Counted from the stretch's first letter, positions 18,901 through 45,537 are shown. The stretch: 64,000 bases of DNA from Anaeramoeba ignava BMAN (GCA_028826165.1 JAPDFW010000118.1:62001-126000), one strand, 5' to 3'. Program-made: numbers and translations. Notes: a model not told the origin generated them from the sequence alone.

Positions 18901-21900
18901 GAAATTTTTCATTTTCAATATTTTTTGTTAATATTTTAATGAAAAAATCATAAATTTGTTTTGGAAAATATTTTTTTTGAATTTTTTTAAGTAAAATTTT
19001 GAATAATTGAAATCCTTTTTTTTGAATCATTTCTTCTTGAAGATAATGATTATATAATAAACAATTTTCAAATATTTCTAATATTTTTTCAAATATTCTT
19101 ATTCTTTGCTTTTCATTTTGATTTTGATTTTGATTTTCTTCAAATAATTCATCAATTTCAAAAATTAAATAAAAAAATGTTTCAATTCCTCCTGAAAATT
19201 GAATAATATCTTGAATATTTGTTAATGTAAATGTTTTAATTTTTGTTATTTTTGAATTTTCTTTGATAATATTTTTTGGATTTTCATTTAAACAAATATC
19301 TTCTTTAATTGATTTTGGATTATAACAAATTATTATTTTTTCATTTAATTTTTCATTAAATATTTCTTTTAATTCTTTTTCAAATTTTGAATTAGAATAA
19401 TGAAATATTTCATTTTCATCAAAAAATGTTTTGTAATTTGGTCCAAGAAAATGAATTGTTTTAATTTGTTTTGAATTAAGAATTTCTTGAAAAATATAAA
19501 TTGTTGATATTTGTCCATAAATTGAATTTTGATTTTCATTTGAAAATATAACATTTGAACCTATTCGATTTTGATTAAAAAGTTCTTTTGAATTCTCATT
19601 TTCAGTTTGATTGTTAATTTCGATTTTATGTGTTGTGTTTTTATTTCCATTAATATAAATTTTTATTTCAATTTCATTTTCAATTTCATTTTCAATTTCT
19701 TTTTTTGATTTTAATTTTGATCTTGATTTTTGATTTGTATATTTTTGTGTAAAAACTAAAAAGTTCCATTCTTTATTTTGAATTTTAATTGGAAAATTTC
19801 TTTTGATTTTTTCATTTTTATCAATATAAATTTGATAAATAATTGATTTTGTTTGATTTTTGTTGTTGTTATCAATTTCAAAATATAATTCAATTCCTTT
19901 TTTATTTTCTGTTAAAAAACTAAATATTCTTGGTTTATATCTTTTATTTTCATTTTTTGTAATATTTGTTCTTTTAAATTCTTCAATTCTTATCCAACAA
20001 CAAAAACTAAATTGTTTGAAAATTATTGAACTTTCAAATTTTGGAATTTCAATATTTGAGTTTTCTTCATAAAAATCAAATATATTTATTGCTTCTTTAT
20101 TTGGATTTTTGTTCATTTTGCTTAATTCATTTATCATTATTTCAAATAATTCTTGATTTTTATTTTTGTTTTTGTTATTGTTTTGATTAAATTGATTTTC
20201 AATTATTTTAAAATATTGTTTCATTTCTGAAATATTCATTTTAAATTTTGCAAATTTTCCAATAATTTCAATAATTTTTTTGAATATTTTGATATTTTGA
20301 ATTTTAGGAATTAATTTAAGTAAAAATGAAATTATTCCTTTTTCACAAATACAACAAATATTATGAATTGATTTTTCACTTATTTCTTCAAATACTTCCA
20401 ATACTTCAATAAAAGAAATTTCTTTTTCATTTTCATTTTCAATTTGATTTTGATTTTCAATTTCATTTTCATTTTCATTTTCATTTTCATTTTCATTTTC
20501 AATTTGATTTTTGAAATTTTGTGAATAAAGTTCTAAAATAATATTAATCATATTTGTGTTTCTGATAATAAAATTGTCTTTGATTGAAAATTTTCCATTA
20601 TCAATCATTAAATCTAAAAGAATTTCAAATATTTCTTTTTTTGGTTTTCTTTTTTCATATTCATAAATTATTTTTACAAATTTTGTTATTGGAATTAATT
20701 CTTGAAATTGTTTTATTAATATTTCATTATTTTCAATAATTTCTTTGATTATTTTTAATGAAAAATTTTTTTTATTTGTATTTTGATCTTCAAAAAATGT
20801 TGTTAAAATTATTAATGATTTTGTTTTCAAAAATATTTCTTGAATAACTTTTCGATTTTTGGAAATTGATTTTAAACATTCTTCAAAAAGTTTATTCATA
20901 AATTTTTGATTTTCAATTTCTTTTTCTTTTTGATTTTGATTTTGATTTTGATTTTCAATTTCTTTTTCTTTTTGATTTTGATTTTGAATTTCATTTTGAT
21001 TTTGAATTTCATTTTGATTTTGATTTTGAATTTCATTTTCATTTTCATTTTCATTTTTAATTTGATTTTTGAAAAATAATTGTTGAATTGAATAAATAAT
21101 AAATTGTTGTTCATCTTGTTCTTCATAATTTTTTACTTTTTCTAAAAATTTTGGAATATAATTTAATGAAAGTTTTTGAATAAATTGATAATTAATTGAT
21201 TCAATCAAAAAATTAATAATTATTATATTTTTTGAAATAATTTCAATAGATCCATTTTGAAATATTAAATTTAAAATTTCAAAATATAATTCTTTTGCTT
21301 TTTCATTTCCATTTTCATTTTCATTTTCATTTTCATTTTCATTTTCATTTTCATTTTCATTTTGATTTTGAATTTGATTTTGATTTTGATTTTGATTTTG
21401 ATTTTGAATTTGATTTTGATTTTGATTTTGAATTTGATTTTGATTTTGATTTTGATTTTCATTTTGAATTTGAATTTGATTTTGATTTTGAATTTTTTGA
21501 ATTTGATTTTGATTTTGATTTTCTTTAATTAATTTTAATAAATTTTCTTTAATTAATTGAAATCCACTATTTTCAATAATTTTGTTTGATGAAATTTTTG
21601 GATTATTTTGAATAATTTCAATTATCATTTCTAAAAATTGATTTAATAAAAATAAATTTGAAATTATTTTTGAATTTTTTAAAATTTGATTAAATAAAAT
21701 TTGATATTCAAAATTATTTTGATATTTTATGATAATATTTTTAAGGAAATCGATTAATAATATTTGTAAGTTTAAATTCATTTCTTCTATTTTAATCTTT
21801 TCTTTTTCTTCAATCTAATCAAAATTAAAATTAAAATTAAAATTTAAAATTAAAATTAAAATTAAAATTAAAATTAAAATTAAAATTAAAATTAAATTAA

Positions 21901-25790: not shown

Positions 25791-25895
25791 AAAAAATTTG
25801 GATTGAAAAAATTTGGATTGAAAAAAAAAAATTTGCTTTTTTTTGTTTCTCATAAATTTCAAGTATTTTTTACACTTAAAAAAAAAATTTCCAAT

Positions 25896-28800
25896 TCAAA
25901 TATCAGAACAAGAATCTAAATAAACTTGAAATTTTTGAACCAAAGAAAATAAACTTTCAGGTTTTTCTTTAAAAATTGAATCTTTTTCAATCCAACCCAA
26001 ATTTTCAGTTAAAAAATTAATAAAAGATTGGACTTGATTTTGATAATTTGGTAAAAAACGAGAAAAAGAAATAAAATTTTCAATTTCCAATTCGAATTCT
26101 TTAAGAAGATTCAACCGAAAAGTGTTCCAATTAATTGACATCCAGTTGATAAGATGGGAAAGAGAAATATAGAAAGGAGAGTTGAATTTAGGATTTAATT
26201 GAGGAGAAGAAAATAAAGCTGAGAAATCAAAAGAATAAGAACCAATTTGATTTTTTCGATTTTTTTGATTTGAATTTTGATTTGGATTTTGATTTGAATT
26301 TTGATTTGAATTTTGATTTGGATTTTCATTGGAATTTTCGTTTGAATTTTCATTTGAATTTTTTGGATCATCAAGGATTTCAATTTTCGAATTTAGAATG
26401 GGAATTGCAAAATCCGAATCAGAAATTGTTTGTAATCCCAAATCAATTAGTTTTTTAATGATTCCTTTTATGGTTATTTGATGTTCCAGCATCTCATTTA
26501 TCAACACAATTAGCTTTTGTTTTGTTGTGTCGAAATTATGGTATCTTGCAATTTGCGCAAGAACAACCAAAAGTTGACTTTCAGAAAGAAGATATTTGGT
26601 CGTTTCCCTTTGAACAAAAGGACGAGCTGAAGCGAGAATTTCCCAAAAAACAAGCGTAAGATTGGATAAATCGGATTTAAATGGATTCGTTATTTTCTGA
26701 TTAAAAAGTTCTGACTTCAAATTCTGATAGAAAACTCCAGTGCTTGAAGACGTTATTTTTGGCGTGTTTTCTTTATCCACCAAAATATCATCAGTGATGA
26801 AACGATATAAAGGAAGACGTAGCTTTGTGTGTACAAAATCAAGGCTTTGAGCAAGTGTTTTTGCGATGTGAAGAACTTCCCGTGTTTTCAAAACTTCCTT
26901 TTTTTCTGTTCTTTCTTCAATTATATTTCTCAGTGTTTTTTGTGTATATGCTTCAAAAATCGCAACAAGTTTGGCCTCATTTGCACTTCCAATATGCACA
27001 AAATATCCGAGAAAACGTGCAAATCCAGGTTGGCTATTTGGCTCAACTAATTTCCAAACTTGAGGGATTAATTCTTCAATTTTCACTAATCTTTTATGGA
27101 TTTTAATCGCGATTTTTGATCCATGAAAAGTCCCTATTTTTAATCCTGTCATTTCCGAAATTTTAATATCTTCATTCAATTCTATTTCAGTTTTTGGATC
27201 GATCCAAAAATTAATTGGTGTCATTTCTTGAAGTTGATTCTTCAAATTTTGTGATGGTTTTTCAAGGCATTCTGGAAATTTTTTCAATAATTCATTCATC
27301 ACATAAACTACTTCTTGATGTGGAATATTTTCTGGAATTGATTCCATTCTTGCTCCATAAATAAATAAAAGTGTAAGCATTTTAATATTCCCTGTTTTGA
27401 ATGGAATTTCAATTGCTTTTGTTTTGTTTTTGTCTTCTTTTGTTGGGTTTTTGTATTTTTCTAAAAGAAGTTTCACAAGTTCGTAATTTGATTCGTAAAT
27501 TGCGTAATGAATTAATGGTGTTCCAAATTCATCAATTAATAAATCGAGATCAAATTCAGAATTTATAAGATCTTTGATATTTTCTGTGAATTGGTTACTG
27601 AGTGCAATTTTGAAAAGTTTCTTTATTATTTATAAATTAAATATTATTTATAAATTAAATATTAATTATAAATTAAATATTATTTATAAATTAAATATTA
27701 TTTTGAAATTAAATATTATTTATAAATTAAATATTATTTATAAATTAAATATTATTTTGAAATTAAATATTATTTATAAATTAAATATTATTTATAAATT
27801 AAATATTATTTATAAATTAAATATTATTTATAAATTAAATATTATTTATAAATTAAATATTATTTTGAAATTAAATATTATTTTGAAATTAAATATTATT
27901 TATAAATTAAATATTATTTATAAATTAAATATTATTTTATAAATTAAATATTATTTATAAATTAAATATTATTTATAAATTAAATATTATTTATAAATTA
28001 AATATTATTTATAAATTAAATATTATTTATAAATTAAATATTATTTATAAATTAAATATTATTTATAAATTAAATATTATTTATAAATTAAATATTATTT
28101 ATAAAATTAAATATTATTTATAAATTAAATATTATTTCCAAATTAAATATTATTTTTGAATTAAATATTATTTATAAATTAAATATTATTTTATAAATTA
28201 AATATTATTTATAAATTAAATATTATATATAAATTACATCAACATCTTCTTTTTCTAGTTCTTGAGATTGAGTTAATTTTAAATTATTAATCCAATTCTC
28301 AGTTTCTTGTCTTTGATTTTGATCTTTAAAAGATGGATAATTTGGAAAAACATCAATCATCAACTTTTTTAAAGCAGATAAAACATGAATAGAAGAAGAG
28401 AGATGATAAGGAGTGTAACCAGAATGATTTCTAATAAGAGGGTCAGCATTATAAGAAAGAAGAAGCTTAAGACATTTCATCTTGTTTGTCTCTGCGACAT
28501 AATGCAAAGGAGTTTGCCCGTTTTGGAATATATTTGGATTTGCTCCAAATTCTAAAAGTATTTTCAAAATTGCGTGTTTATTTGCTTCAAGTGCATAAAA
28601 TATAGGATATTTTCCTGTCCAATCCTTTTTGCTTAGTGATTCTTTTGATTTGATTAATTCACTTCGTACTTTTGATTCATCCATTAATTTAATTGCAATA
28701 ACAATTGGTTCATCATTTGGTGATAATGATAAATTTGAATTTTGCATTTCATACCAAAAATTAATTGATTGCTATTTTTTTGAAATTAAAGTTCCAAATT

Positions 28801-29129: not shown

Positions 29130-29705
29130 AATTTTAAATTCAAATTTAAATTCAAATTCAAATTTAAATTCAAATTCAAATTGAAATCCAAATTCAAAAT
29201 CAAATCCAAATTTAAATTCAAATCCAAATTCAAATCAAATTCAAATTCAAAAGTCCAAAAAATTGAATTTTCAAATTCAAATTCAAATTCAAATTCAAAT
29301 TGAAATCCAAATCGAAATTCAAATTCAAATTCAAATTCAAATTTAAATTCAAATTTAAATTCAAATTCAAATTCAAATTCAAATTCAAATTGAAATCCAA
29401 ATCGAAATTCAAATTCAAATTTAAATTCAAATTTAAATTCAAATTAAATCAAATCCAAATTCAAATTCAAATTCAAATTCAAATTCAAATTCAAATTGAA
29501 ATTCAAATTCAAATTCAAATTCAAATTCAAATTCAAATTTAAATCCAAATCCAAATCCAAATTCAAATTCAAATTCAAATCCAAATTTAAATTTAAATTC
29601 AAATTCAAATTCAAATTGAAATCCAAATCGAAATTCAAATTTAAATTTAAATTTAAATTTAAATCCAAATCCAAATTCAAATTCAAATCCAAATTCAAAT
29701 CCAAA
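29130..29705. repeat. Intergenic (AAATTC/AAATCC)n hexamer tract
   Basis: Directly visible, with a recurring higher-order AAATTGAAATCCAAATCG unit. Confidence 0.85.
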
Positions 29706-29719
29706 ATGAACTCTTTTGT

Positions 29720-32700
29720 TCATTTCTTTTCGGTTTCATCCAATTCAATAACATCACTATCACTATCAGTTTCTAACTTCTCATTCTTTTGAATTTGGTT
29801 ATTGTTATTGTTATTATTGTTGTTATTGTTATTGTTATTATTATTGTTATTGTTATTGTTATTGTTGTTGTTATTGTTGTTATTGTTATTATTGTTGTTA
29901 TTGTTTTCTAATATTATTTCCGTTTTTTGTTTTTCAGTTTCACTCCAAGTTTGATGAACAAAAACTCTTGTGAATTCATCATCAACAATCTCTCTTAATA
30001 AAAAATCAAAACTTGAATCATCTTCAAATTGGTAAAATTCCATTGCATTTTTTAACTCATCAATAATATCAAGAGATAAATTCAAATCAAGTCTATCAGT
30101 ATAAAAGAACTTAATCAAAACATTCATTGCTTCAAAACTTTTTTCACTATAATCTTTAACTGTATTTGAATCATCAATAACATTAATAAACATATTCCGA
30201 AAAAGTTCCGATCTTGCAAATAAAAGAATTTTATGAACTTTCACAACTTTATCATCAACAACAATTCCAAAGTCTTTGCCTTCTTCATCTTCATACATTC
30301 TCTTTAAATCTTTCAATAGATTTTCCTTTCCTGATTTTGACTTTACTTCTTGAGCTGAAATTCCAATTTCTTTGGCAAATCTTTCTGTAAATGATTTATT
30401 TCTTATAAATCCTGAATAAATCCATTTCATGAAATCTATTGTTTCCTTTAGTGTCTTTTTTTTCAAAATGGGTCTTAGTTTTTTATCATAATCTTCCCCA
30501 ATTCTAAACTTTAAAATTTGACTATGAAGTTTAATTGGTGTATCGATTGTTTCAAATTCAACATCTCCTAAATGAAATGGTTCTTTCACAACATTTTCTA
30601 GTTCGAATTGAATTGATCTTGATTGTTGAATCATTTTTTTCTTATCGGAAAATGTTCCACAAACATCTTCTGGTGTTTGACCCTTTTAAAAAAATTGATA
30701 TTTAAATTATTTCCTTAAAATTTTGATATATTTTTCAAATTACAGACTATTTAAATTGAAGAAAAAAATTTTGTAAAATTGTTGATTTACACAATTAATT
30801 TTATTCTTACATTCTAAAATAATAATAATAATATAATATTAATATTATATTAATTATCTCATTTTATTTTTACATTTTTAATATCGATATAAGATCCATG
30901 AAGTAATAATAATCTTAAAACAAGAAGGTTTTGGTGATATCTACAAGCAAGATGAAATGCTGTATCACCCTTAAATTAAAATATAAATCAAATTAAATTA
31001 AATCAAATTAAATCAAATTAAATTAAATTCAAATCAAATTAAATTAAATTAAAATCAAATCAAATTAAATCAATTCAAATTAAATTAATTTTTTTACTCC
31101 ATAAATTGTATATTTCACTATATTAGAATCTTTCTTCCATGATACTTCCTAGTTAAATTTATCCCAAAATTTATTCTCTTATCAGAAAATAATAATAATA
31201 AAAAAATAAAATAATTTTTCTTTTGTTTTACATGTTGTTTTGGAACTTTTTCATTAATTTCAATTCCTTGAGAAAGAATTAATTTCACAGTTTCATAAGG
31301 AGAATTACAAACACATGCAAGATGAAGTAAATTGATATCATTTTTCTGAATTTTTTGTTTTTGTTTTTGTTTTATTTAAGTTTCTAAATTTTCATTTATT
31401 GAAAAATAATTGAAAAATTATCAATCAAAAATACATATTTCATTTTAGGATCTGATCCCATATCAATTAAAAATTGTATAATTATTGGGCCAACTCCTGA
31501 AAGAACAGCAGAAATTAAAGGAGGTTGATCCTATTCATATAATCAATTTAAATTAAATTTTCAATAAGAAAACAAAAAATTACCGAAAAAAAATAAACTC
31601 ACAAACTAATTCAAAAAATATATTTATATTTATATTTATATTTATATTATATTTATATTTATATTTATATTTATATTGATATTTACATTCTAATCTCAAA
31701 AAAGAAAAAATCTTTATTCAGAAAAGAAAATGATTTGATGAATTATTTTTTCTTTAATATACATTGAATTTATTAAGATCTGCTCCATGATCAATCATAT
31801 TTCTAAAAAAAGCTAAATCAAAAATGTTAATACAAGCATAATGTAAAAGAGTGTTTCCCTGAAAATTATTTTTTGATAATAAATTAAAGGATTAGATTTC
31901 TCTTTCTAATAATAGAGAAAAAAAACAAAAAAACAAACATCCTATTTTTTTTTTGTTTAAATTGAAATGAATTCTAATTAAATTTTTGTTTTAATATTTT
32001 TTTACATTCTAAAATTTGAAAAAGTTTTGTTTATTTTTATTTTTATTTTTATTTTTATTTTTAGAATAAATTTACATCAGGAATATTTGGATCAGCTCCT
32101 CTTTCAATCAAATATTCACAATTTTTCAAACACATTCCCTGACAAGCACAAACTGCTGCAGTTAAACCCTGTTTATGATTTATTATTATTATTTATTATT
32201 ATTACTATTTTTTTCTCTAAAAAATTTACATTCTTTTTTTTTAAAATAATTAATATCATTTGTTTTTAAGTAATATAATTGAATTTACAAACTAAATTCC
32301 ATAATATAAATAAATACTAAAATAAATATTAAAAGGAAATGCTGATAATTTACTGTTCTTTTGTTAATATCAACTCCAGCATTTAAAAAAATATCTAATT
32401 TTTGGGATTGAATACGATCATTTTTTGCTAAAATATGAAGACATGTTTCTCCCTATTATTTTATTTTTTATTATTTTATTATTTTTATTATTTTATTTTC
32501 ATTATTTTATTTTTATTATTTTATTTTTATTATTGAATCAAAATAAAGAAAAATTTACTGCCTAATTAATTTTTGGGTTTTTTTTTTGAAAAGATAAATA
32601 TGAAAAAAAAAATTGGCTTCTTTTTTTTTCTTCAATTTACATCCTAAAAATCCAAAAAAGAAAAGATAGTTTTCGAATTTAGATTTTGAATTTAGATTTT

Positions 32701-35700
32701 GAATTTAAATTACATCCTGTTGATTAACATCAACTCCCATTTCAATTAAAGTTTGATGAAGAAGAGAGGTAAAAGGATAAATTGTAGTTGCTAAATGAAG
32801 TAATGTTTGATCCTATTTTATTAATAAAGTGAATTTTTTTCTTTTAGAAATAATTTCTTTCAATTCAATTCTAAAATTATTTTTTACTTTATGCTAAAAT
32901 TATAAACGAGATGATTATTAAAAAAAAATTAATTGTAAATGGTTGATTTTTACATTTTTGATTTTAGCATCTGTTCCTTTCAATTTCAATAAATCAAAAA
33001 TATAATTAATTGGTTGAGAATGAATCATTGCTGTATGAATTGGTGTATTTCCCTAAATTAAAATATTTTAAAAAACAATTTTTAGTTTTACTTTTGTTTT
33101 TGTTTTTTGAATTAAAAGTTACAATCTGAAATATGATAATTAATTCATTATTTTAGAAATTTATATATCAAAATAAATTATGATTTCTCTTTTCTTACAT
33201 TCTAAAAAAAAAAAAGGAAAATTAATTTGAATTTGAATTTGAATTTGAATTTGAATTTGAGAAGAAAAATAAGTTAATACATTCGGAATATCAGATGCAC
33301 TTCCTGCTGAAATAAGAGCTTTGAAAATATTGTCACTTAATAGTCTTTGAGATCCATACTTAAGTGCATAATTTAAAGGTGTATCTCCCTTAAATAATAT
33401 TATTATTATTTATTTTTTTTATTAAAAAAAAATTAATCCTCTTTTTTATCGTAGAAAGTCAAAAAATATCAAACAGACTAAAATGAATAAAATTAAATTT
33501 TTCATAAATTGATTGATTGATTGAATAAAAATTATTGGTATTACTTTCTGTTTTTGGTTAAAAATTTTTTTTTGAATAAGAATATTTTTTTTTTGAATAA
33601 GAATATTACGTCTTGTAAATTCATATTAGGTTTATATTCCAATAGAAGAGAAATAGATCTAAATGGATGATTATATTCAAAAGCACAATGAAGTGGTGCT
33701 AATAACTAATTTAATATTTTTGATACAGAACAAAAAAAAAGAAGCATTTTTTCAATTTATCAAAAAAATTTATATTCATTTAAACACTAATTAATACAGC
33801 CTATTTTAATGTTTAAAAACAACAAATAAATAATTTCTATTAACTTTCAAAACTAAAAATAAATTGATTACATCCGTCTAATTTTAATTATTAATTTAAT
33901 TTTAATTATTAATTTAATTTATTTAGCAAACAGTTTGAAGATCAATATTTGCTCCTTTATCAAGTATTACTTTCGTAATTTCAGGTTCATGATGATGAAC
34001 AAAACAATAATGTAATGCAGAAAATCCCTAATTCGAAAATTTTATTAAGAGATGATTACTTGAAAATTTGTAAAAAAAATAATAAATTTATCCAAACCAT
34101 CTTATATGAAAAAAAAAAAAAAAAGAAAATTAAATTAAATTTAAATTAAAAGAAGAAGAAGAAAGAAAAAATTACATTCTTTTTAAATTAAATTGAAAAT
34201 TAATTTTTGATTAAATTATTATTATTTTAAAATTGATTCAAAATTTAATAAAAAAATTTATTTTCAATACATCTTGTGTATCAATTTTAGTAACATCTGC
34301 CAATGCTTGATATCCAACTTTTTGCATTCTTTTTGAAATTAATGCACAATGTAATGGTGTTTGACCCTAAATTCAAAATCAAAATCAAAATCAAAATCAA
34401 AATCAAAATTAAAATTAAAATTAAAATTAAAATTAAAATTAAAATCAAAATCAAAATTCAAAATTAAAATTAAAATTGAAATTAAATTCAAAATTAAAAT
34501 TAAAATTAAAATCAAAATCAAAATCAAAATTAAAATTAAAATTAAAATTAAAATCAAAATTAAAATTAAAATTAAATGAGAAATTAAATGAGAAATTTTT
34601 CAATTCTATTATTTTTACCGACTTAGATTAAATTTTGAATTTTATTGAATTTTGAATTTTATTAAATTTGATTAGATTTTGGATTTTATTGAAAATTTAC
34701 TTTCTAAATCAAATCAAAAAAAAAATTATTTACTTTTTCTTGTTCACTTTCTTGAATGAAATTTTTTTATATAAAAAAAATATTTGTTTGATATACATTG
34801 CGAAGATTTGGATTAGATCCTGCTGCAATATACATTTGAACAGTTCTAGTATCACAAGAAAGAGCAGCATAATGTAAAGGAGAATTTCCCTTAAAATAAT
34901 AATTTTAAATTTAATTATTTTTTTTTACTCAAATCCAAAAAAAAAAGGATTTTTTTTATATTTGGATTTACTTTCTATTTTTTTTTTAATAAAAAAATTA
35001 AATATAAAACATAAACTCTAAATTAATTTACATTCTTTTATTTGATTTGATTTGATTTGATTTGATTTTTTTTAGTTGATTATTTTAATTGATTTTGAAA
35101 ATGGAAAATTCTTACATCAACCGAATTAACATCTCCATAAGAATTTAATAATCTATTTAAAATATCTGCATTTTTATGTAATTCTGTTGCAAGAGAAAGA
35201 ACAGATTGATCCTTTTTTTTATATATATAAAAAAATATGATAAAAATTTTTGTTTTACAAACAAAAAAGAAAGATTTGTTACATCCTAAATTATTCCAAA
35301 AAATAAAATGATAAAAATAAAATATTGCAACTAAAACAAAACAAGGATGATTTTTTTTTCTTACATGCTAAAATAATGAAATTCAATAAGAAGACTAAAA
35401 ATAAGAATAATATTCTTTGAATTTTTTTACATTTAGAGAATTAACATTTGCTTCATCTTTTAAAAAAAGTCTAATAATCTCAGTATCAAAAGGAGGAGAG
35501 TATTTAAGAGCTAAATGAAAAGGTGTTTCAATCTAAAATATAATTTAATATAACTTATTTTAATTTTAAAGTGATTACTCCCTATAAAAAATATGAACAA
35601 ATAATAAAATAAATTTTTATTGTTTAAATAAATACATTAGAAATATCGGGATTTGCATTATATGAAATTAAAGTTTTAATGAAATCATATTCAACTTTGT

Positions 35701-38700
35701 GATTCATTAAAATATGTAATGGTGTATCATTCTAAATGAATTTTTCAAATATTTTTATAAAGTAAATTAAATTTAATTACTGTATAAAAAATTTTGAATT
35801 ACAAAACATACTTTCTATTTATGAATAAAGTGATGATAAAATTTAAATAATTGTTTGTTTTCTTTATGTTTTTTTTTTGTTGTTTTACATTCTTTAAAAT
35901 ATCCAAAAAAAAAAAGAGATGAATTTAAAAATAAATTTCCAGAAATTATAATAAATACATCTTTTGCGTCTGGGTTTGAATCATATTTAAGTAAAATTTC
36001 AATAAATTTCAATGGAAGACGTCCAGAACAAGCATAATGAAGAGGAATATGATGCTTTATAAAATAATTTTAAATGAAGAAAATGATTATTTATTTTTCC
36101 AAAAAAAAAAAGAAAAAAAGAGGAATAAAACTTTGATTTAATAATTACAACCTAATAATTCCAAAAAGAATTAGAAAAATAATGAATGTGAAAATTATTA
36201 TTTTTTTCGGTTTGATAATTTACATTCTTTCAGAAAAATATTTAAAAAAGGGATTATAATTAGTTTCGTTTTTGTTTTGTAAGATTTTTTTTATAAATAA
36301 TTACATCAAAAATATTAACTGGTGATTGTTTTTCAAGCAATAAAGAAACAATTTTAAAAGAAGGTTCACTATTCATAAGTTCTAAATGAAGAGGCAGAGC
36401 TCCCTGAAAATGAAATTATTTAAAATGGATTTCTGTTAAAAACAAAAAAAAAAGAAAATGTTAATCAAAATAATATTTACTTTCTAAATAAATAAAAATT
36501 AAGATATCAATAAGCAATTATTATGATAAAATGAATTATTTACATTCTAAGGAAGAAGATAAATGAATCATTTAAAACAAAATAAAACAAAGTAAATTGA
36601 TTATTTTTATTACATTGACTAAACTTGTATTTGCCTTTGAATTAAGTAGTAATTGAACAATTTTAAGTCTTTTGTTGATATTTACGTGAACAAACTTCAT
36701 GAAGAGTAGTGTTTCCCTATTTTTTGGAAAAATATATTATACACAAAATCAATAAAAATAAAACAAATCAATCACTCCCTTTTTTTACTTCCTATTGAAT
36801 AAAAATTAAAATATTAACAAAAAATAAATTAATTAACCTAAAATTATTTACATTCTAAAAGTCAAAAAAAAAGATTATTGAATGATAAGTGATTAATGAT
36901 TAAATGTTTTGTTTTCTCTTCTTATTTTGATTGATTTATTATTTTCTAAAAATTTTAATTACATTGGCTATATTAGGATCACTTCCTGCTTTTAATAATA
37001 TTTTTACAATTTTGGGAGTAACTTGACCTCTTCTAAGATAGATATTAAGTGCATTTTGATTCTTGATTTTTTATTTCAAAAAAAACAAAACAAAACTAAT
37101 ATGTAAAAATGATAAATATTTGTTTTCTTACAAACTAAATTTATCAAGAGAGAAAAGAAATGAAATGAACACAAAAAAAAGAAAGAAAAGAAAAGAAAGA
37201 TACATTCTAAAAAATAAAAAAAGATTTAAAATTTGAATTATAATTGGCAAATAGTTATAAAAAAAATAAGATTTACATTAACAGCAGAAAGATTAGCTTT
37301 TGATTCAAGAAATAAATTTAATAAAGAAGTCTCAAAAGCACCAATATGAAGAAAGAATAAATGAAGACATGTATAATTCTATAAACATTATTGATTAATT
37401 TATTTGTTATGATTAGAATTAAATGCAAAATAATTGGAAAAAATACATCCTATTTATTATTAATATTAATCCAAAAAAAAATAAAGTAAAGTAAAATTCA
37501 CATTGTTTTTGAAATGAATAACACAGTATTAAATAATAAATTTATAGTGATTTTTACAGACTAGTTTGAATTTATGAGAAAACCAAATTTAAAATGTATT
37601 AATTTTTTTTGTCTCTCTTAAATTATACATTTTTAGCATTCACATCTGCTCCAAGTCGAACAATTTTTTCAGTGATATTATTGGGAACAATATTTATTAA
37701 CGCGCAATGCAAAGGAGTTAAATTCTTTTTTTTTTTCAATTTAATTTTAATAATAATATTATTTATAAAAAATAATAGAGAATGAAATAGTGAAATTTTT
37801 ACATTTTCCTAAAAAAAAAATAAAAACAATAAAATAGAATAAGAAAGAAAAAAATAAATCTTAATTACATTTGTCACATTTAAATTAATAGCTTGAGTTA
37901 GGAGAAAATCTATCATTTTAAGACGATTATGATGATTTCCAAGAAGATATGTAATTGGATAATTCTATTAGTTAATAAATATTATATTTTAAGAAAAATC
38001 ATCCAAAAAAAAAAAGAAAGAAAATCCAAAGAGAATTATTTACTTGTTTCTAAAAAAAAAAAGTGTTTAAATGAAAAATTAATTCTTTCTCAAAAAGTTA
38101 ATTAATCAAAAAAAATACATTCTAAAAAAGATTTAATTTAAATTAATAATTTTATAATTCCAAAAAAAAAAAGCTCAATTATTAATAATATTAATATTAC
38201 GTTTGGAATATTAATATCAGCTCCATTTTTAACAAGAGTTTGAATAATACTAAGATCCGTATCTGGTGAATCATGTCTTCTTGGTCTAGAACATGCAATA
38301 TATAAAGGAGTTTCTCCCTAAAAAATGAAAAAATTGATAATTTTATTTTGGAATGAAATTTCATTATTTTTCTCATTTTTAATAAGAAAAAATCAAACAT
38401 AAAAAAAGATTTACTTGCTAAATTTATTTGATCTTTTAAGATGATTTCAAAAATAATTTGATTTTGTTTTAAAATACATTCTAAAATGAATATAAAAAAA
38501 GAATTTGGTTTTCGTTTTTGTTTTTGAATAAAAAATAAGTTGAAGAGAAAATACATTTTTTGCATTAACATCTGCTTTATATTTTATTGCTACTTTAACT
38601 CCTTTATGAAATAAAGATGTGCAAAATTTATGAAGAACGGTTTGTTTCTTTTTTGGATTTTATATTAATTTTTTGAGAATTTTCTACAAAAGAAAAAAAA

Positions 38701-40460
38701 TACTTGCTAAATAAAAAATAAAAAAATTTTTTTAATTTGGATTTGAAACCAAAAAAAAAAATCAAATCATTTATTTATTTACATTCTTTTTGTTTTTTTT
38801 TTTTGGTAAGAAAAATTAAAAAGAAAAAGTTGTTTTGTTTTTAGATGAGAAATTATACATTTGCACAATTAACATCAGATCCAATTTGAAGAAGATATTT
38901 AATTCCAGAAATTTTTAAAGAAGAAGCATAAATGAAAAAAGGTGTTTCATCCTAGATTATATTTTTATTAATCAAATGATTTTATCTTTCTTTGAAAAAT
39001 AAAATAAAATAAATTGATTACTGCCTACAAATTTTTTTCATAAAAAAGAAAGAAGAATTGGAATAAATTATTTTTTACGTTCTAAAATTAAAATTAATTA
39101 TAAATATAAATATAAATGAAAAAATATATATATAAATATAAACATTAGTTCGATCAATATCAGCTCCAGATAAAATGAGTAATTTAATGGTTTCTAATGA
39201 AACAACATTATTACAAGCTATATGAAGAGGTGCATTTCCCTAAAAGAAAAATAGATAATTAAATTTGAATAAAAGAAATGTGAAAAAAAAATAATTTTTG
39301 ATTACAGACTAAAAAATCAAAAAAAAAATAATTAAAAATTTGGAAAATGAAATTATAATTGAAAATTACATGCTGAAAACAATAAAGAAAAGAAGGAAAA
39401 AAAAAAAGAATTTAATGAATTTTCATTTAAAAATCTTGGAATAAATTTTCATTTAAAAATTACATTTGGTTCATTAACATTTGGATGTTCATTTAAAATT
39501 ATTCGAATAATTTTCTCTGAACAACGTTTATAACAAGCAATATGTAAAGCTTGATTTCCCTAATAAATTACATTTATATTTATAAAACAAAATGGATTAA
39601 AAAGGAAGGAAGAAAGAAAGAAAGAAAGAAAGAAAAATTACATTGAACTATGTTTATATTTATATTTATATTTATATTTATATTTATATTTATATTTGAA
39701 AAAGAAATGTAAGATAAAAAATACATCTCTTTCATTAACATCTGCCCCTTTTTCGATTAAAAATTGAACAATAGTTGGATCATTGTTTAAAATTGCTTTG
39801 TGAAGAAATGTAAAACCCTTTTAAAGAAAACAAAATATCAATAATAAATTCTTTTCTTTTTTAAATGAAGAAAATTTGATTTTACACCCTTTTTTATTAA
39901 AAGAAATGATAAGTATTTGAGTATTTAAAAAAAAATTTGATTTACAATTTTGGATGAAACAGAAAGACCACATTCAATTAAATATTCTTTAATCTTTTGG
40001 CTTGATTTAAGAAAAACAGCTAAATGAAGAGCATTTTCATCCTAAATAAAAAATTTTTTTCTTAGAATTTTTTGAATTTAATGGAAAAAGAAAATTTACA
40101 TTCTATTCCAAAAAAAAAAAAATTGGAAAAATTTCAATAATAAATTAATTTATATTTAAAATGAGAAAATGATTTACTTTCTAAAATTAAAATTAAAATT
40201 AAAATTAAAATTTAAATTAAAATTTATTTTTATTTTTATTATTTTTATTTTACATTTCTCGCTAAAATATTTATTCCTCTTTCAACAAGTAATTGAACCA
40301 TTTTAAAAGAACCAATACGAACAGCTTTATGAAGAGCTGTTTCTAAATCTGAAGAATCGAATAAATTAAGTTGTCCTTGTTCAATTGCCTTCAATACTTT
40401 TTTTTTGCTTTTTTTATTAACTCCTCGAAAAATTAATGGAATTTGTGGAGGATTTTGCAT
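29720..40460 (-). CDS. Ankyrin-repeat (~31 repeats) + BTB/POZ protein encoded by ~86 exons including 53 microexons
   Basis: Large exons: 40460-40254, 40041-39946, 39817-39725, 39559-39464, 39239-39144, 38951-38859, 38647-38555, 38317-38201, 37964-37869, 37724-37629, 37378-37277, 37061-36963, 36716-36614, 36403-36305, 36054-35959, 35731-35636, 35532-35431, 35211-35116, 34889-34797, 34366-34271, 34027-33932, 33705-33610, 33388-33281, 33052-32954, 32812-32714, 32452-32354, 32168-32076, 31858-31763, 31530-31435, 31345-31232, 31148-31098, 30969-30874, 30682-29720. Nearly all translate as G/D/N-x-T-P-L-H...GAD(V/I)NxxN/D. The last exon carries BTB motifs (KDFGIVVDDKVVKVHKILLFARSELFRNMF). Confidence 0.9.
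30744..40180 (-). other. Array of 48 three-nt and 5 six-nt phase-0 microexons (AG|NNN|GT) between ankyrin exons
   Basis: Lowest coordinate and residue of each: 40178K,40100N; 39886G; 39642FN; 39370H,39306S; 39079N,39022A; 38783N,38704Q; 38478N,38415Q; 38119N,38044KQ; 37803EN; 37558S,37447D; 37204N,37132F; 36852N,36789E; 36544N,36481K; 36224N,36149V; 35889N,35812K; 35579G; 35365H,35283D; 35032N,34972K; 34701K,34619S; 34176N,34098M; 33872TD,33798A; 33545K,33475S; 33199N,33123I; 32888HK; 32641D,32559A; 32289F,32230N; 32006N,31939D; 31687N,31603F; 30811N,30744S. Confidence 0.85.
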
Positions 40461-40559
40461 TTTTTAAAAAAAGAAAAAGAAAAGAAAGAAAAATGAAAAA
40501 TATTTTTGAAATATTTTTTTTATTGAATATTAAATCAATTCTTATTTTGTTGATTCAAT

Positions 40560-42356
40560 TTAAAAAATTAAGCAATTTTCTTTTTTTTGATTTTGATTAT
40601 TAAATTTTTTAATTAATAAATCAAATAAATTTGGATTTGTTTGATTTAATTGAAAATAATCAATTCCTCTTTTGATTTCATTAATTATTTTTCTTTGTAA
40701 TTTGAATTTCTTCTTTAATTTGATTTGAATAAATCCAATATTCAAATATTTGAAATGATTTATTACTTAATTTACTATAATCTGTAACTTTATTTGATTT
40801 ATCATTTGTTACAGATAAAAACATTCCTCGATATAATTCACTTCTCATTATTAATATTAATTTAGGAAATTTATATTGTTTTTCTTTTCTTTCAATAATA
40901 AAATCTTTTTCATTTTCATTTAAATAAATTCTTTTAATTGTTTCTTCAATTTTTCATTTGAATTTATAATTCCTTTAATTTCACAATATAATATTGGATT
41001 TATTTTGGAATTATTTGAATAAATCATTTCAAATATTTGATTTGATTCTTTAATTGATTTATTTGAAATAATTTCTTGAAGTTTTTCAATTCGATTTTGA
41101 TCTTGATTTTGATTTAATCTATATTTTAATATTAATTTATGAGCTTCAATTATTTCTCCATTTTCTATTTTAAATGAAATATCACAAAATTGTTTTCTTC
41201 TAAATAATTTTATCAAATCTTCTTCAAGATTGGAAAAAGAAGGAGGAGAATAATAAAGAAATGAATTTTCATATCCACAAGAAATATGATAATTAGAAAT
41301 ATCTTCATTGAATCTTAATTTAGGAAGTTCAATTTCAATTGGAATAAATTGAAATTTGTGATTTTCGTTTCCTGTTTTATCAAATTTGATATCTCCAAAA
41401 ATGATAAGTTTTCCATTATAAGTTAAAATCAAAGTATGATAACCTCCAATAGAAAATTCAAGAATATCATCATTTTGAAATAAATATGATTTGAGTTCAG
41501 TAAATTCTTTTTCATTTTCATTTTTGACAAGTCCATTATATCTCAAATCTCCACATGAATAAAGTTTTCTTTTTGGATTTTGATTTTGGTTTTCAATCAA
41601 CATTATTGAATGAAAAAATCCAGCTTGAATATCAATTATTTTGCCTTTTGGAATATTTTGGATTTTGGTTAATTTTTGGATTCGATCTTGTGGTTGTCTA
41701 ATTGGTTTTCCTATTCCCAGTTGATCCCAAAAATTATTCCCACATACAAATAATTCTTGATTTGAATTTAAAACAAAAACATGATTTGAATAAATTCCTG
41801 AAAATATTTTAGAAACATTTTTCATCATTAAAACTAGTTTTTGTGTTTCATAAGGTGGCTCAGCATCAAAACCAAGTTGACCATAATTATTTAAACCAGT
41901 TCCATAAGCATTTTGATTTGAAGTTAATAAGTAAACTGAACTCCCTCCAGAAACAATATCTTTAATTATTCTATCATTTGTATCTTCAATTAACGATGAA
42001 ATATTGATAAATTCATTTGGATTTTTTGGATTAATATCTTTTCCTTTGGCAAATACATTTCCTTCTATTGTTAAAATAACTTCATTTGAAAAACCAACAG
42101 TTACTTTTTGAATATTTTCTTCAATTTGGATTTTTTCAGGATTTTGTTTTGAATCTCTTAAATATTCTATTGCTTTTCCATTTTCAAAAAGGAAAATTGT
42201 TGAAAAAAAACCTGATGAAATTTGTTTAATTTGTTTTTCATTTTCATTTTCATTTTCATTTTCATTTTCAAATTGAATTGGTTTTGTTATTTCATTTGGT
42301 TCATTTTTGATAAGTTTTGGCTCTTTATTTGCACCAAAAAATAAAATTTCATTCAT
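40560..42356 (-). CDS. RCC1-repeat + tandem BTB protein (apparent frameshifts near 40.85-40.95 kb)
   Basis: RCC1 motifs GLNNYGQLG, CGNNFWDQLG, GFFHS, GGYHT; BTB FCDISF...AHKLIL. A second BTB (RSELYRGMFLSVTND...FEYWIY) continues in shifted frames to about 40560. Confidence 0.85.
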
Positions 42357-42446: not shown

Positions 42447-45400
42447 CTATTTAATAAAAGCATTTAAAGATTTTTTTGAACCAGTTTGAAATTTAGCCAT
42501 TTTCTTATTTAATAAAGATGCTTTAATATCAATTTTCCAATGACCTTGAAAAGGAAAATTAATTAATTTTGAAATGGAAAAATATTTTGAAATAAATGGA
42601 GTTTTTGAATATAAAGAGAATTTTTGATTGAGTTTTTTTTGGATATTTTCTTTGTTTTTTTCCGAATCCAAATTTGATGTGATATTTGATTTTGTTTGTT
42701 CATTAATTAATTGTGAAGTGATTTCAATTTCCAAAAATTGGATATTTTTGAGTAATTTTTCCATTTCTGATTCGATTTTTCCAGAAATCGTAATTGTTGT
42801 TTCTTCGATTATTGAAGATTGAATTTCTGAAGGTTGAATTTGCGAGAAATTTAGGGAAAGTTTTGGTTTTAAACAAAAGAAATATTTTGGGAATGGTAGT
42901 CTCAATGATAAGAATAATGAATTTGATAAAAAATCAAGGATTTGAACGAAATGAGAAAATTGAAGTTGGTTTTGTTTGTAATTATTGATAAACCAAATGA
43001 GTAATTGATGTAAGTTTTGGGGTTGGTGATTTTCTGAAGCAAAAAGTGGAGATTCAATGATTTGAGTAAATTTCATTTGAATATTTTTGACAAGTTGATT
43101 TTCCAGAAATAGAAGTACTTGAGAAGATTTTGAATGAAAATGGAACTGATTTTCTTTTTGGATTTGGTTTTCATTCAATTCAACAATTTTGGTTAATGAA
43201 AGAATAATCATTGAAGCGATCACTTGGTATACTTCAATGATAAAGTAGCTTTGTTTATCAATATCAAAGCACATTGTTTTGATTTTTTCGTAGTTTTCCC
43301 AGTTTTCAAGAGCCAAATCTTGAAGACTCATCAATTTACTAACAAATTCTTTTTTGATATTATTTGATTTGGTTTCTTGATCATTTTTTTCAGATTGAAG
43401 CAAAATTTCTTTCAAATTATGTATGAATTTTTGCATTTTAATTTTTGCAGAAAGGAATTTTTTTTGGAATCTGAGTGATTCTTTTTTGCCAAATGAATTT
43501 AAGCATTGCAATGATTTTGAGAGTGTGTCCGCATTATCAGGATCACTTGAAAGTAAAGACATTATGTGAATAAAATACTCCTTATCATTTGGGAATTTCT
43601 GATGGAGCATTGTGAAGAGTAAATGGGAAAATTGTTCATATCCTTGAAGAAAAGCGTTTTTAGCAAATAAATAAACTATCCAAGCATTATTTGAGGAGAT
43701 TATTTGATGAGAAATGGAAAGAATTTCTTGGAAGATGAATAAATATGAAAAATTTTGATTTTGGTTTTCATTTTCAATTTCAATTTGATTTTCATTTTCA
43801 TAATCACTATTTGAATGGTAAGTTTCAATCTCTTGATTTGAATTATTTTCAATTTCCATTTCGATATTTGGTATCATCAATTTGAGTTGTATTTTTTCGT
43901 TTTTGATCAAACTAGAAATATTTTCTGAAGAAAGAACAAAATTATTGAGTTTACAAGTTTGAAATAAAGGAATAGTTAAATAATGGATGTTGTTTGTTGC
44001 TTTGGAAATATCGATGTTTGAATTAATTTTATCTGAATTTTGGTTGTTTTGTTGTTGAGTTAACACAGAAGAAATATGAAGAAAAAGTTTTTGGATAATT
44101 AGACCATCGTCTTCAAGCATGAGAGAGTGATTTAAATATACAAGTTCTGATAGGCAATTTGCAATCAATTTCTGGTGATGAGGGACTAAGAAAAGAAAAT
44201 CAATTAATTGTTTGAGATAAACAGTTTGTGTTGTGATTAATGAGCTGTCAAGAATTTCTGCGGTTGTTTTTTTGGCTTTTTCTGTTTGAATTGCTGTTGT
44301 TAAACAAGAAAGAAATCTCTTGAACTGTGAATGGGAAATGGAAGAAATGTTCGGGTTGTTTTTCATTTGTTGAAGAAGGATTTGGATGTATTGCAATAAA
44401 GCCTTGTTTTCCTCATCATTTTTTGTTGAAATGACAAGAATTTCCAACGACAAAATGGATATTTCAAGATCCAAATGGAAAATCAAATTCCAAGAGTATT
44501 TTTTACTTTGTTCCAACAAAAACCCAATTTCCAAATTTGGATCGTTTGTTTTTTGGGGAATTAAATTGGATGGTGTTTCACAAGAAACTTGAGAATTCAA
44601 GTATTGCCAAATGAGGGATTTGATGCAATGCATAACTTCTGTGATTATTTGCAAATCAACAACGCCTTTTAAATTATCCAACAACGATTGTAAAACCAAT
44701 TTCCACAGAGAATCCAATTGAGAAAAATGGTTGACAAGCAAAAAATTAAGCATTTTCAAGGAAACCAAACGGATATCCTTTCTTGGATCGTAAGAAATAT
44801 AAGTCATCAAAACAATAATAAAATTTGGAACCAAAACAAGAATTTTCGATATGAAAACATTCATGCTTTTCAAAGTTGGCAAGACAAACTGGTGTGAAGG
44901 GAACAAATACAACAAGTTGATTCCGATCTGGTAAGCTTTTTTTGCAAGCTCGGAATCGTGATACATGTGCTTAAGAAGCGAGGAAAAAATAATCATGTTG
45001 TCAAGACTTGAATACACTTCATTTTGAATATTATTTTCAATCATTTCAAGAATACTTTTTGCAAAAACAGGAGATTGAGCACACATTTTGTGAGGAAGTC
45101 CAAATTGCCGATTTGCGTTCATATTTAAACTTGGAGCTCAATGCATTCCTGATTTTTTGATGAACCTGAATACGATCCACTAGCAAAAAAGCCAAACTTC
45201 CAAACATTCTAATTGCTAAAGCACGAGCTATTGGATCGTTACTTTCGGTTACAAGTTGAATTCTTGATATTGCTTCAAATGGATTGAGAAAATTTTCAGG
45301 TATAAGATTGATTTCCAAAAATACTTGCAAAATATGATATCTTATTAAATTTGTTCCATTACAAAATAAATCAGTGAATTTTAATATTAGTGAGTTGATT

Positions 45401-45537
45401 ACTACTGGATTTGGATATTTTTGAACAAGATCATAAAATGATGAAATGGCTTCATATTGTTCTTGAATATTTGAAGAACAAAGTTTTTTATCCAAATCAG
45501 AAATTTCTTTGAAATGATTATTGAATAATGAAGACAT
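42447..45537 (-). CDS. INTS7: Integrator complex subunit 7 (one apparent frameshift near 45090)
   Basis: N-terminus DLDKKLCS..EQYEAI...QKYPNPVVINSLILKFTDLF..GTNLIR...SNDPIARALAIRMFGSLA...VHQKIRNALSS matches the INTS7 N-terminal HEAT region as I recall it; continues in ORF 42447-45122. Confidence 0.8.

What the first reader, a model, noticed from the sequence alone, without database searches (positions are those of the whole stretch)
29720..40460. Ankyrin-BTB gene whose beta-hairpin residues are each encoded by single-codon (3-nt) microexons
Seen: ~31 ankyrin exons each begin at the G position of GxTPLH and end at the D/N of the next repeat, so direct joining would delete the x-x of D/N-x-x-G. 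In 29 junctions the intervening sequence is split into roughly equal introns (mostly ~45-120 nt) by AG|NNN|GT or AG|NNNNNN|GT elements, 53 in all (48 of 3 nt, 5 of 6 nt), none a stop codon. Including them gives textbook hairpins: RN-K-N-DENALH, KN-N-Q-GETPL, VD-N-K-GNSPLH, RN-K-S-GQTPLH, PD-N-D-GNTLLH, QD-D-A-GETCLH. A 93-nt exon plus two codons equals the canonical 33-aa repeat. Established: isolated 3-nt microexons exist, but I know of no gene with dozens of consecutive single-codon exons. Inference: all are really spliced in, giving about 85 introns in 10.7 kb that gene predictors and short-read aligners would miss.
Basis: partly seen in the sequence, partly recalled or inferred. Interest (0 to 1): 0.96.

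Follow-up and report, generated by a model that had tools for sequence, protein, structure and literature searches.

The report
Ankyrin gene with 49 one-codon exons
In the anaerobic amoeba Anaeramoeba ignava, this ankyrin-repeat gene appears to encode the loop-tip amino acids of its repeats on separate 3-base exons (49 in one gene); an RNA-derived protein of a sister gene shows that such one-codon exons really are spliced in, although the public gene models inspected omit them.

Summary
Observation confirmed. The minus-strand ANK-BTB gene (40460-29720) of Anaeramoeba ignava parses into 32 large exons, 49 three-nt and 5 six-nt exons. All 85 introns are GT-AG and phase 0 (median 71 nt; genome mode 76). 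AG-N3-GT occurs 49 times against 2.6 in shuffles, with no stop codons.

Key evidence: a transcriptome-derived EukProt protein of a paralog has two extra residues at each of four hairpins relative to its GenBank model. It maps without mismatch to eight AG|NNN|GT exons; a second transcript confirms another pair.

The layout is family-wide (roughly 3,400 such exons, my estimate), with unverified runs of up to 10. It also occurs in A. flamelloides.

One exon has a surplus base, probably an assembly error. Most likely mechanism: constitutive splicing by intron definition, one short intron at a time. Alternative use of the codons is untested.

The scan noted this layout before on other DNA of this genome, without RNA-derived support. 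I found no paper describing it.

The parts
29720..40460 (-). ANK-BTB gene: 86 exons, 85 phase-0 GT-AG introns, CDS 4,297 nt as assembled (about 1,431 aa allowing for one surplus base), about 31 ankyrin repeats plus C-terminal BTB region
40254..40460 (-). First exon (207 nt, ATG at 40460), N-terminal cap and first ankyrin repeat
   Evidence: Pfam Ank E 3.7e-6
30874..40041 (-). 30 internal repeat exons of 93-117 nt, starting at 40041, 39817, 39559, 39239, 38951, 38647, 38317, 37964, 37724, 37378, 37061, 36716, 36403, 36054, 35731, 35532, 35211, 34889, 34366, 34027, 33705, 33388, 33052, 32812, 32452, 32168, 31858, 31530, 31345, 30969
   Evidence: four tested singly hit Pfam Ank models
37132..40180 (-). 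Three-nt exons, 5' third; first base at 40180, 40102, 39888, 39372, 39308, 39081, 39024, 38785, 38706, 38480, 38417, 38121, 37560, 37449, 37206, 37134
33475..36854 (-). Three-nt exons, middle; first base at 36854, 36791, 36546, 36483, 36226, 36151, 35891, 35814, 35581, 35367, 35285, 35034, 34974, 34703, 34621, 34178, 34100, 33800, 33547, 33477
30744..33201 (-). Three-nt exons, 3' third; first base at 33201, 33125, 32643, 32561, 32291, 32232, 32008, 31941, 31689, 31605, 31148 (weak), 30813, 30746
32888..39647 (-). Five six-nt (two-codon) exons; first base at 39647, 38049, 37808, 33877, 32893
   Evidence: not significant as a class on its own
36614..36716 (-). Repeat exon of 103 nt, one base too long at the A4 run 36673-36670; stop at 36665-36663 as assembled; probably an assembly indel
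   Evidence: similar frameshifts in neighbouring INTS7, RCC1-BTB and BEACH-type genes
31346..31434 (-). The only junction with a single 89-nt intron and no microexon; the next large exon carries the two hairpin codons (K, N) itself, an internal control
29720..30682 (-). Last exon (963 nt): final partial repeat, BTB/POZ region, poly-Asn tail, stop
   Evidence: Pfam BTB E 5e-11

Best explanation
This is a spliceosomal gene in which almost every ankyrin repeat is one 93-117 nt helix-pair exon plus, usually, two separate one-codon exons. These supply the two residues after D/N/T in the beta-hairpin loop, and they are normally all included.

Splicing most likely works by intron definition. Each intron is an ordinary short intron for this genome (about 70 nt, very AU-rich, strong GTA donor) and is recognised across its own length. 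The introns around a 3-nt exon must be removed one after another, because the 3' and 5' splice-site machinery cannot sit on the same three bases at once. After the first removal the codon is just the end of a larger exon. The narrow preferred intron length guards against skipping.

The architecture is old (shared with A. flamelloides) and spread by duplication of the repeat unit and of whole genes, with sporadic intron loss or gain giving the 6-nt and intron-free junctions. The product is probably a BTB-containing substrate adaptor with a long ankyrin binding groove.

Shown: the elements, their statistics, inclusion in two paralogs, family-wide and cross-species occurrence. Inferred: inclusion in this gene, ordered intron-defined splicing, the evolutionary route, the adaptor function.
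For: Enrichment 49 vs 2.6. All 85 introns GT-AG and phase 0; median 71 nt and only two above 108 nt, against a genome mode of 76 (PMC11550330 Table S3A). Donors and acceptors at microexons are as strong as at large exons.

Transcript-derived P0151 (EukProt EP01156 P006866, 374 aa) differs from GenBank KAJ5069692.1 (366 aa) only by QE, KV, YM and MF at four hairpins. These map with zero mismatches to eight AG|NNN|GT exons, introns 58-127 nt. P0153 confirms a K,T pair the same way. P0154 has KS where its GenBank model has a gap (locus not fetched).

Intronless ANK paralogs keep the full spacing in 48 of 50 hairpins, while many annotated intron-containing ones are 2 short. Asn dominates the first position in both classes (14/25 vs 19/48). 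In 20 loci picked only by their BTB exon, AG-N3-GTA is 208 vs 10-41 for other spacings, with 0 stops. Annotated 'intron' lengths step up by about 70 nt per embedded codon. A. flamelloides locus: 25 vs 0-9. The AlphaFold model of P0151 (pLDDT 96) places the added residues in the inter-repeat loops; the Pfam Ank_2 score rises from 60.9 to 71.6 bits with them.
Against: Only 3 of 30 annotated proteins looked up had a transcript-derived cluster partner, so direct confirmation covers 5 mapped junctions in 2 genes. An assembled contig shows only a major isoform. One exon is frameshifted as assembled. No branch-point motif was found. The order of splicing was not tested.
Confidence: 0.86

Rival explanations
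1. The one-codon exons are real but alternatively spliced to a substantial degree, so one gene yields many loop variants at the target-binding positions: a splicing-based receptor library, working like Schistosoma micro-exon genes.
For: All exons are phase 0, so any skip keeps the frame. The encoded positions are the hairpin residues randomised in DARPins (own knowledge). Paralogs carry runs of 5, 7 and 10 codons, and A. flamelloides runs of 4-6 or more. The family is much expanded.
Against: Every junction seen in transcript-derived proteins is fully included. In this gene the codons exactly fill the canonical hairpin. Long runs in paralogs align as conserved loops (F-Y-D vs H-F-D before the same next exon type), and equally long loops occur inside ordinary exons.
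Confidence: 0.12
2. This copy is a recent pseudogene, or makes a truncated or repeat-skipping product: the microexon layout is inherited but the surplus base in exon 36716-36614 is real.
For: 103-nt exon with a stop at 36665-36663, and no GT-AG pair inside it that restores the frame. No transcript-derived protein of this gene found.
Against: No other lesion in 4.3 kb of CDS and all 170 splice sites intact. The conserved INTS7 gene and other neighbours on this contig show the same kind of one-base frameshift. The assembly is polished nanopore data.
Confidence: 0.2
3. The elements are not exons: each gap is removed as one 130-260 nt intron, as GenBank models it, or the AG..GT sites are recursive-splicing relics, giving ankyrin repeats two residues short.
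For: Public models join large exons directly. Direct joining keeps the frame.
Against: Transcript-derived proteins contain the residues. No stops in 59 codons here or in 208 elsewhere. The spacing is 3, not 0 (N0 = 2). Intronless paralogs never show the shortened hairpin.
Confidence: 0.03

Closest known systems
Schistosoma micro-exon genes (MEGs; PMC10526429)
   Same: Multigene family with arrays of very short, mostly frame-preserving exons that automatic annotation misses.
   Different: MEG exons are mostly 15 bp (usually 6-81), 10-20 per gene, in introns of 0.1-5 kb; they encode secreted, largely disordered proteins and are alternatively spliced. Here the exons are single codons in 50-110 nt introns, at one fixed position of a folded repeat domain, and included in the transcripts seen.
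Plant and fungal ultra-short microexons (PMC8831610; PMC12230235)
   Same: 1-15 nt internal exons, conserved, misannotated, flanking introns removed consecutively.
   Different: The Coprinopsis genome has 27 three-nt exons in 26 genes; this one gene has 49. In plants 9 nt is the commonest size, and the word 'tandem' does not occur in that paper's main text.
Animal neural microexons (3-27 nt, SRRM4 programme)
   Same: Frame-preserving inserts on protein-interaction surfaces, 3 nt at the minimum.
   Different: Regulated cassette exons in long introns, usually one per gene (own knowledge). Here they appear constitutive and structurally required, in a unicellular metamonad.
One-exon-per-repeat genes, e.g. 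brown-algal ROCO LRR and NB-ARC TPR candidate receptors (PMC3341825, PMC11378527; titles and abstracts only)
   Same: Repeat domains built from repeat-sized exons in an expanded protein family.
   Different: There the whole repeat is one exon; here the loop residues are split off codon by codon.
Ankyrin-BTB/POZ proteins (putative Cullin-3 adaptors)
   Same: N-terminal ankyrin array and C-terminal BTB region.
   Different: About 31 repeats; part of an Anaeramoeba expansion with both intronless and microexon members; Cullin binding untested.

Membership tests
Ankyrin-BTB protein | Ankyrin repeats and a BTB/POZ domain in one reading frame | tested here: met
   Pfam Ank on five exons tested singly (four above the Ank cut-off, one at 21.0 vs 21.1) and BTB on the last exon; phase-0 joins; one surplus base noted
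Ankyrin-BTB protein | Binds Cullin-3 or a substrate | not testable with these tools
   inferred from domain content only
Microexon | Internal exon of at most 15-30 nt flanked by canonical AG and GT, above chance | tested here: met
Microexon | Present in mature mRNA, in paralogous genes | tested here: met
   transcript-derived P0151 and P0153 map exactly to 10 three-nt exons
Microexon | Present in mature mRNA of this gene | tested here: inconclusive
Schistosoma-type micro-exon gene | Most of the coding sequence made of microexons | tested here: not met
   177 of 4,297 coding nt
Schistosoma-type micro-exon gene | Extensive alternative splicing of the microexons | tested here: inconclusive
   the three transcript-derived proteins show full inclusion; one contig per gene cannot show minor isoforms
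Schistosoma-type micro-exon gene | Secreted, largely disordered product | tested here: not met
   folded ANK-BTB architecture; paralog model pLDDT 96; signal peptide not formally predicted
Recursive splicing (zero-length exon, AG|GT) | Acceptor directly followed by donor, no bases retained | tested here: not met
   N0 count 2 vs 4.8 in shuffles; three bases retained in transcripts

The most novel reading that the evidence does not exclude
The one-codon exons form a residue-level diversification system for ankyrin binding loops. Codons are included or skipped combinatorially, and whole acceptor-codon-donor units are gained and lost in evolution. A large ANK-BTB family would then act as a natural DARPin-like receptor library, possibly for recognising symbionts or prey.
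Probability: 0.15. Interest if true: 0.96.

Novelty: new variant of a known kind. Interest (0 to 1): 0.84.

Why it matters
It pushes exon size to the single-codon limit at scale: dozens per gene, an estimated few thousand per genome, and apparent runs of up to ten in a row. That gives a natural test system for two open questions: how spliceosomes order the removal of introns only three bases apart, and how introns come to sit at consecutive codon boundaries. It also means the Anaeramoeba ankyrin proteins inspected in GenBank and UniProt lack their hairpin-tip residues, and that published intron counts and lengths for these genomes are probably biased. The split-off residues are the classic target-binding positions of ankyrin repeats, so a role in diversifying binding loops is directly testable with the published RNA-seq.

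Tried and rejected
**Reads.** The message did not call the DNA human-like, named no places and said to go on with other tools. I therefore later sent exon references from inside that stretch to protein-level tools. The DNA patterns I searched were generic splice-site motifs.

**Joined model.** It was never sent to any search or folding tool; exons were searched one by one by reference, and scripts used coordinates only for frame and junction checks.

**Genome letters.** Later genome searches fetched no loci, so the loci of P0071 and P0154 were not read.

**Dead ends.**
- The window gene's own protein or transcript was not found.
- No branch-point motif above shuffle.
- No trace of recent tandem duplication of microexon units: adjacent codons identical 28 vs 23.4 expected (p 0.17), and adjacent introns no more alike than random pairs.
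- The two A. flamelloides strains are too close (96-99%) to test selection.
- The backwards-read control of the single-element pattern is high for both spacings (521 and 437), so it is uninformative; the N4 spacing (36 vs 380) is the usable control.
- The apparent N2 excess is mostly GAT codons ending large exons.
- Paper searches for Anaeramoeba plus microexon, and for consecutive 3-nt microexons in protists, returned nothing.

Full report
Source. The window is contig 119 of a 42,843,398-bp assembly in 147 contigs. These figures equal Table S1 for Anaeramoeba ignava BMAN in PMC11550330, a free-living anaerobic metamonad with very AT-rich introns (mode 76 nt, median 102). The family hits looked up are annotated Anaeramoeba proteins.

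The observation. On the minus strand of 29600-40600, [TC]AG-N3-GTA occurs 39 times; most other spacings give 0-2, N6 gives 5 and N12 gives 4. The plus strand and the rest of the window show no peak at 3. A full parse by coordinates gives 32 large exons, 49 three-nt and 5 six-nt exons. All 85 introns are GT-AG and phase 0, 46-252 nt long, median 71, only two longer than 108. Of 31 junctions, 22 have two 3-nt exons, 3 have one, 2 have a 3-nt plus a 6-nt, 3 have one 6-nt, and 1 has none. At that last junction the next large exon carries the two codons itself. Shuffled gaps give 2.6 such elements (max 7) against 49 observed, and none of 59 codons is a stop (P about 0.006). Splice sites at microexons are as strong as those at large exons. 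The six-nt class and the GAA at 31148 are less secure.

One lesion. Exon 36716-36614 is 103 nt and changes frame at an A4 run, giving a stop at 36665-36663. The adjacent RCC1-BTB gene, the conserved INTS7 gene and a BEACH-type gene on the same contig also change frame without an intron, and the assembly is polished nanopore data. An assembly indel is therefore the likelier reading (about 80%, my estimate).

Are the codons spliced in? The joined model was not sent to any search tool; exons were searched singly by reference. Evidence came from protein collections instead. A search with the last exon returned 150 relatives. Many have hairpins two residues short, whereas intronless ankyrin ORFs of the same genome keep the full spacing in 48 of 50 cases. 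Cluster look-up showed that GenBank model KAJ5069692.1 (P0002, 366 aa) has a partner from the EukProt A. ignava set (P0151, 374 aa). Its name has the form of a TransDecoder call on a de novo transcript contig; that it is transcriptome-derived is my inference from the name and from what I know of EukProt. The two differ only by two extra residues at each of four hairpins. A spliced alignment to its locus on contig 93 places all eight residues, without mismatch, on AG|NNN|GT exons separated by 58-127 nt introns. A second transcript-derived protein confirms a K,T pair on contig 66, and a third has KS where its GenBank model has a gap. So single-codon exons are real in this family and the public annotation skips them. 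For the window gene the same is inferred from identical architecture.

Extent. A strict pattern for two tandem 3-nt exons matches 55 places in the genome against 3 for its control; of 30 inspected, 27 had a parsed flanking exon, ankyrin-like in each case, and 3 gave no parse there. A strict single-element pattern matches 380 places against 36 for a 4-nt spacing. About 10% of elements fit that strict pattern (5/49 and 21/208), which suggests roughly 3,400 three-nt exons genome-wide; this is an estimate. In 20 loci chosen only by their BTB exon, 16 carry six or more elements and none of 208 codons is a stop. A non-ankyrin BTB gene with seven introns has none (P0024). Annotated intron lengths step up by about 70 nt per embedded codon. 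Some paralogs have runs of 5, 7 and 10 evenly spaced codons between repeat exons; these lack transcript evidence. An A. flamelloides ANK-BTB gene shows the same elements (25 vs 0-9 for other spacings), in clusters of ordinary-length introns, including runs of four to six. Orthologous proteins of the two species average 37% identity (PMC11550330), so the architecture is old.

How it works. The introns flanking the microexons have the genome's ordinary length (median 69 nt between adjacent microexons) and strong GTA donors, which is what intron definition needs. From established spliceosome geometry, U1 and U5 contact the last three exon bases at a donor while the acceptor machinery covers the first exon bases. 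Both sides of a 3-nt exon therefore cannot be engaged together, and removal must be sequential, as reported for plant microexons (PMC8831610). Skipping would require a 130-220 nt intron, disfavoured where the mode is 76. This part is inference. The added residues lie in the inter-repeat loops of a confident model of P0151 and match intronless paralogs in composition, so they are probably structurally needed and constitutive. The three-intron unit most simply spread by duplication of repeats and genes, with each of the three introns missing in some junction of this gene. I found no sequence trace of recent duplication, so gain versus loss is unresolved.

Comparison and novelty. Three-nt exons are known singly (27 in the whole Coprinopsis genome, PMC12230235), and arrays of microexons are known in Schistosoma MEGs (mostly 15 bp, long introns, alternatively spliced; PMC10526429). 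I found no paper on microexons in Anaeramoeba or on consecutive single-codon exons, within the limits of the library. The gene fails MEG membership and uses the ordinary spliceosome, so I class it as a new and extreme variant of a known kind. Earlier scan notes describe the same layout elsewhere in this genome and state that no RNA could be checked. The library reading matches one of those notes and reuses its wording; it remains untested and is not favoured by the few transcripts seen.

Noticed in passing
L012 (- strand) 986-1662; L021 (-) 1507-1991 and 2245-2922; L029 (-) 1085-1770: A. ignava paralogs with runs of 7-10 consecutive 3-nt elements, mostly spaced 55-100 nt apart, between repeat exons, apparently spelling long loops codon by codon; no transcript evidence.
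   Followed up: partly
L047 17379-17823, 18140-18448, 23939-25690 (A. flamelloides SCHOONER1, model KAJ6234995.1): Runs of 4-6 or more 3-nt elements, an unannotated 93-nt ankyrin exon at 25792, and multi-kb insertions inside the runs; nearly all elements are shared with strain BUSSELTON2, with one Ser/Tyr difference at 24348.
   Followed up: partly
window 40560-42356 (-), 42447-45537 (-), 16072-21781 (-): RCC1-BTB, INTS7 and BEACH-type genes each change reading frame without an intron; likely unpolished indels in this contig.
   Followed up: partly
P0153 vs L028: The N-terminal 100 residues of this transcript-derived protein do not match the genomic exons upstream of its last repeat; probably a chimeric assembly of two paralogs, but recombination or trans-splicing is not excluded.
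   Followed up: partly
G000 C93 194894-196976 (P0154/P0129): ANK-BTB gene with all repeats but the last junction in one long ORF; only the 3'-most junction seems to keep introns and hides two residues. Useful for polarising intron gain versus loss.
   Followed up: no
genome-wide: Many long intronless ankyrin ORFs of 800-2,300 aa coexist with the microexon class, often in tandem clusters.
   Followed up: no
window 28223-28747 (-): Small intron-free ankyrin ORF (174 aa) just downstream of the gene, with full-length hairpins.
   Followed up: partly
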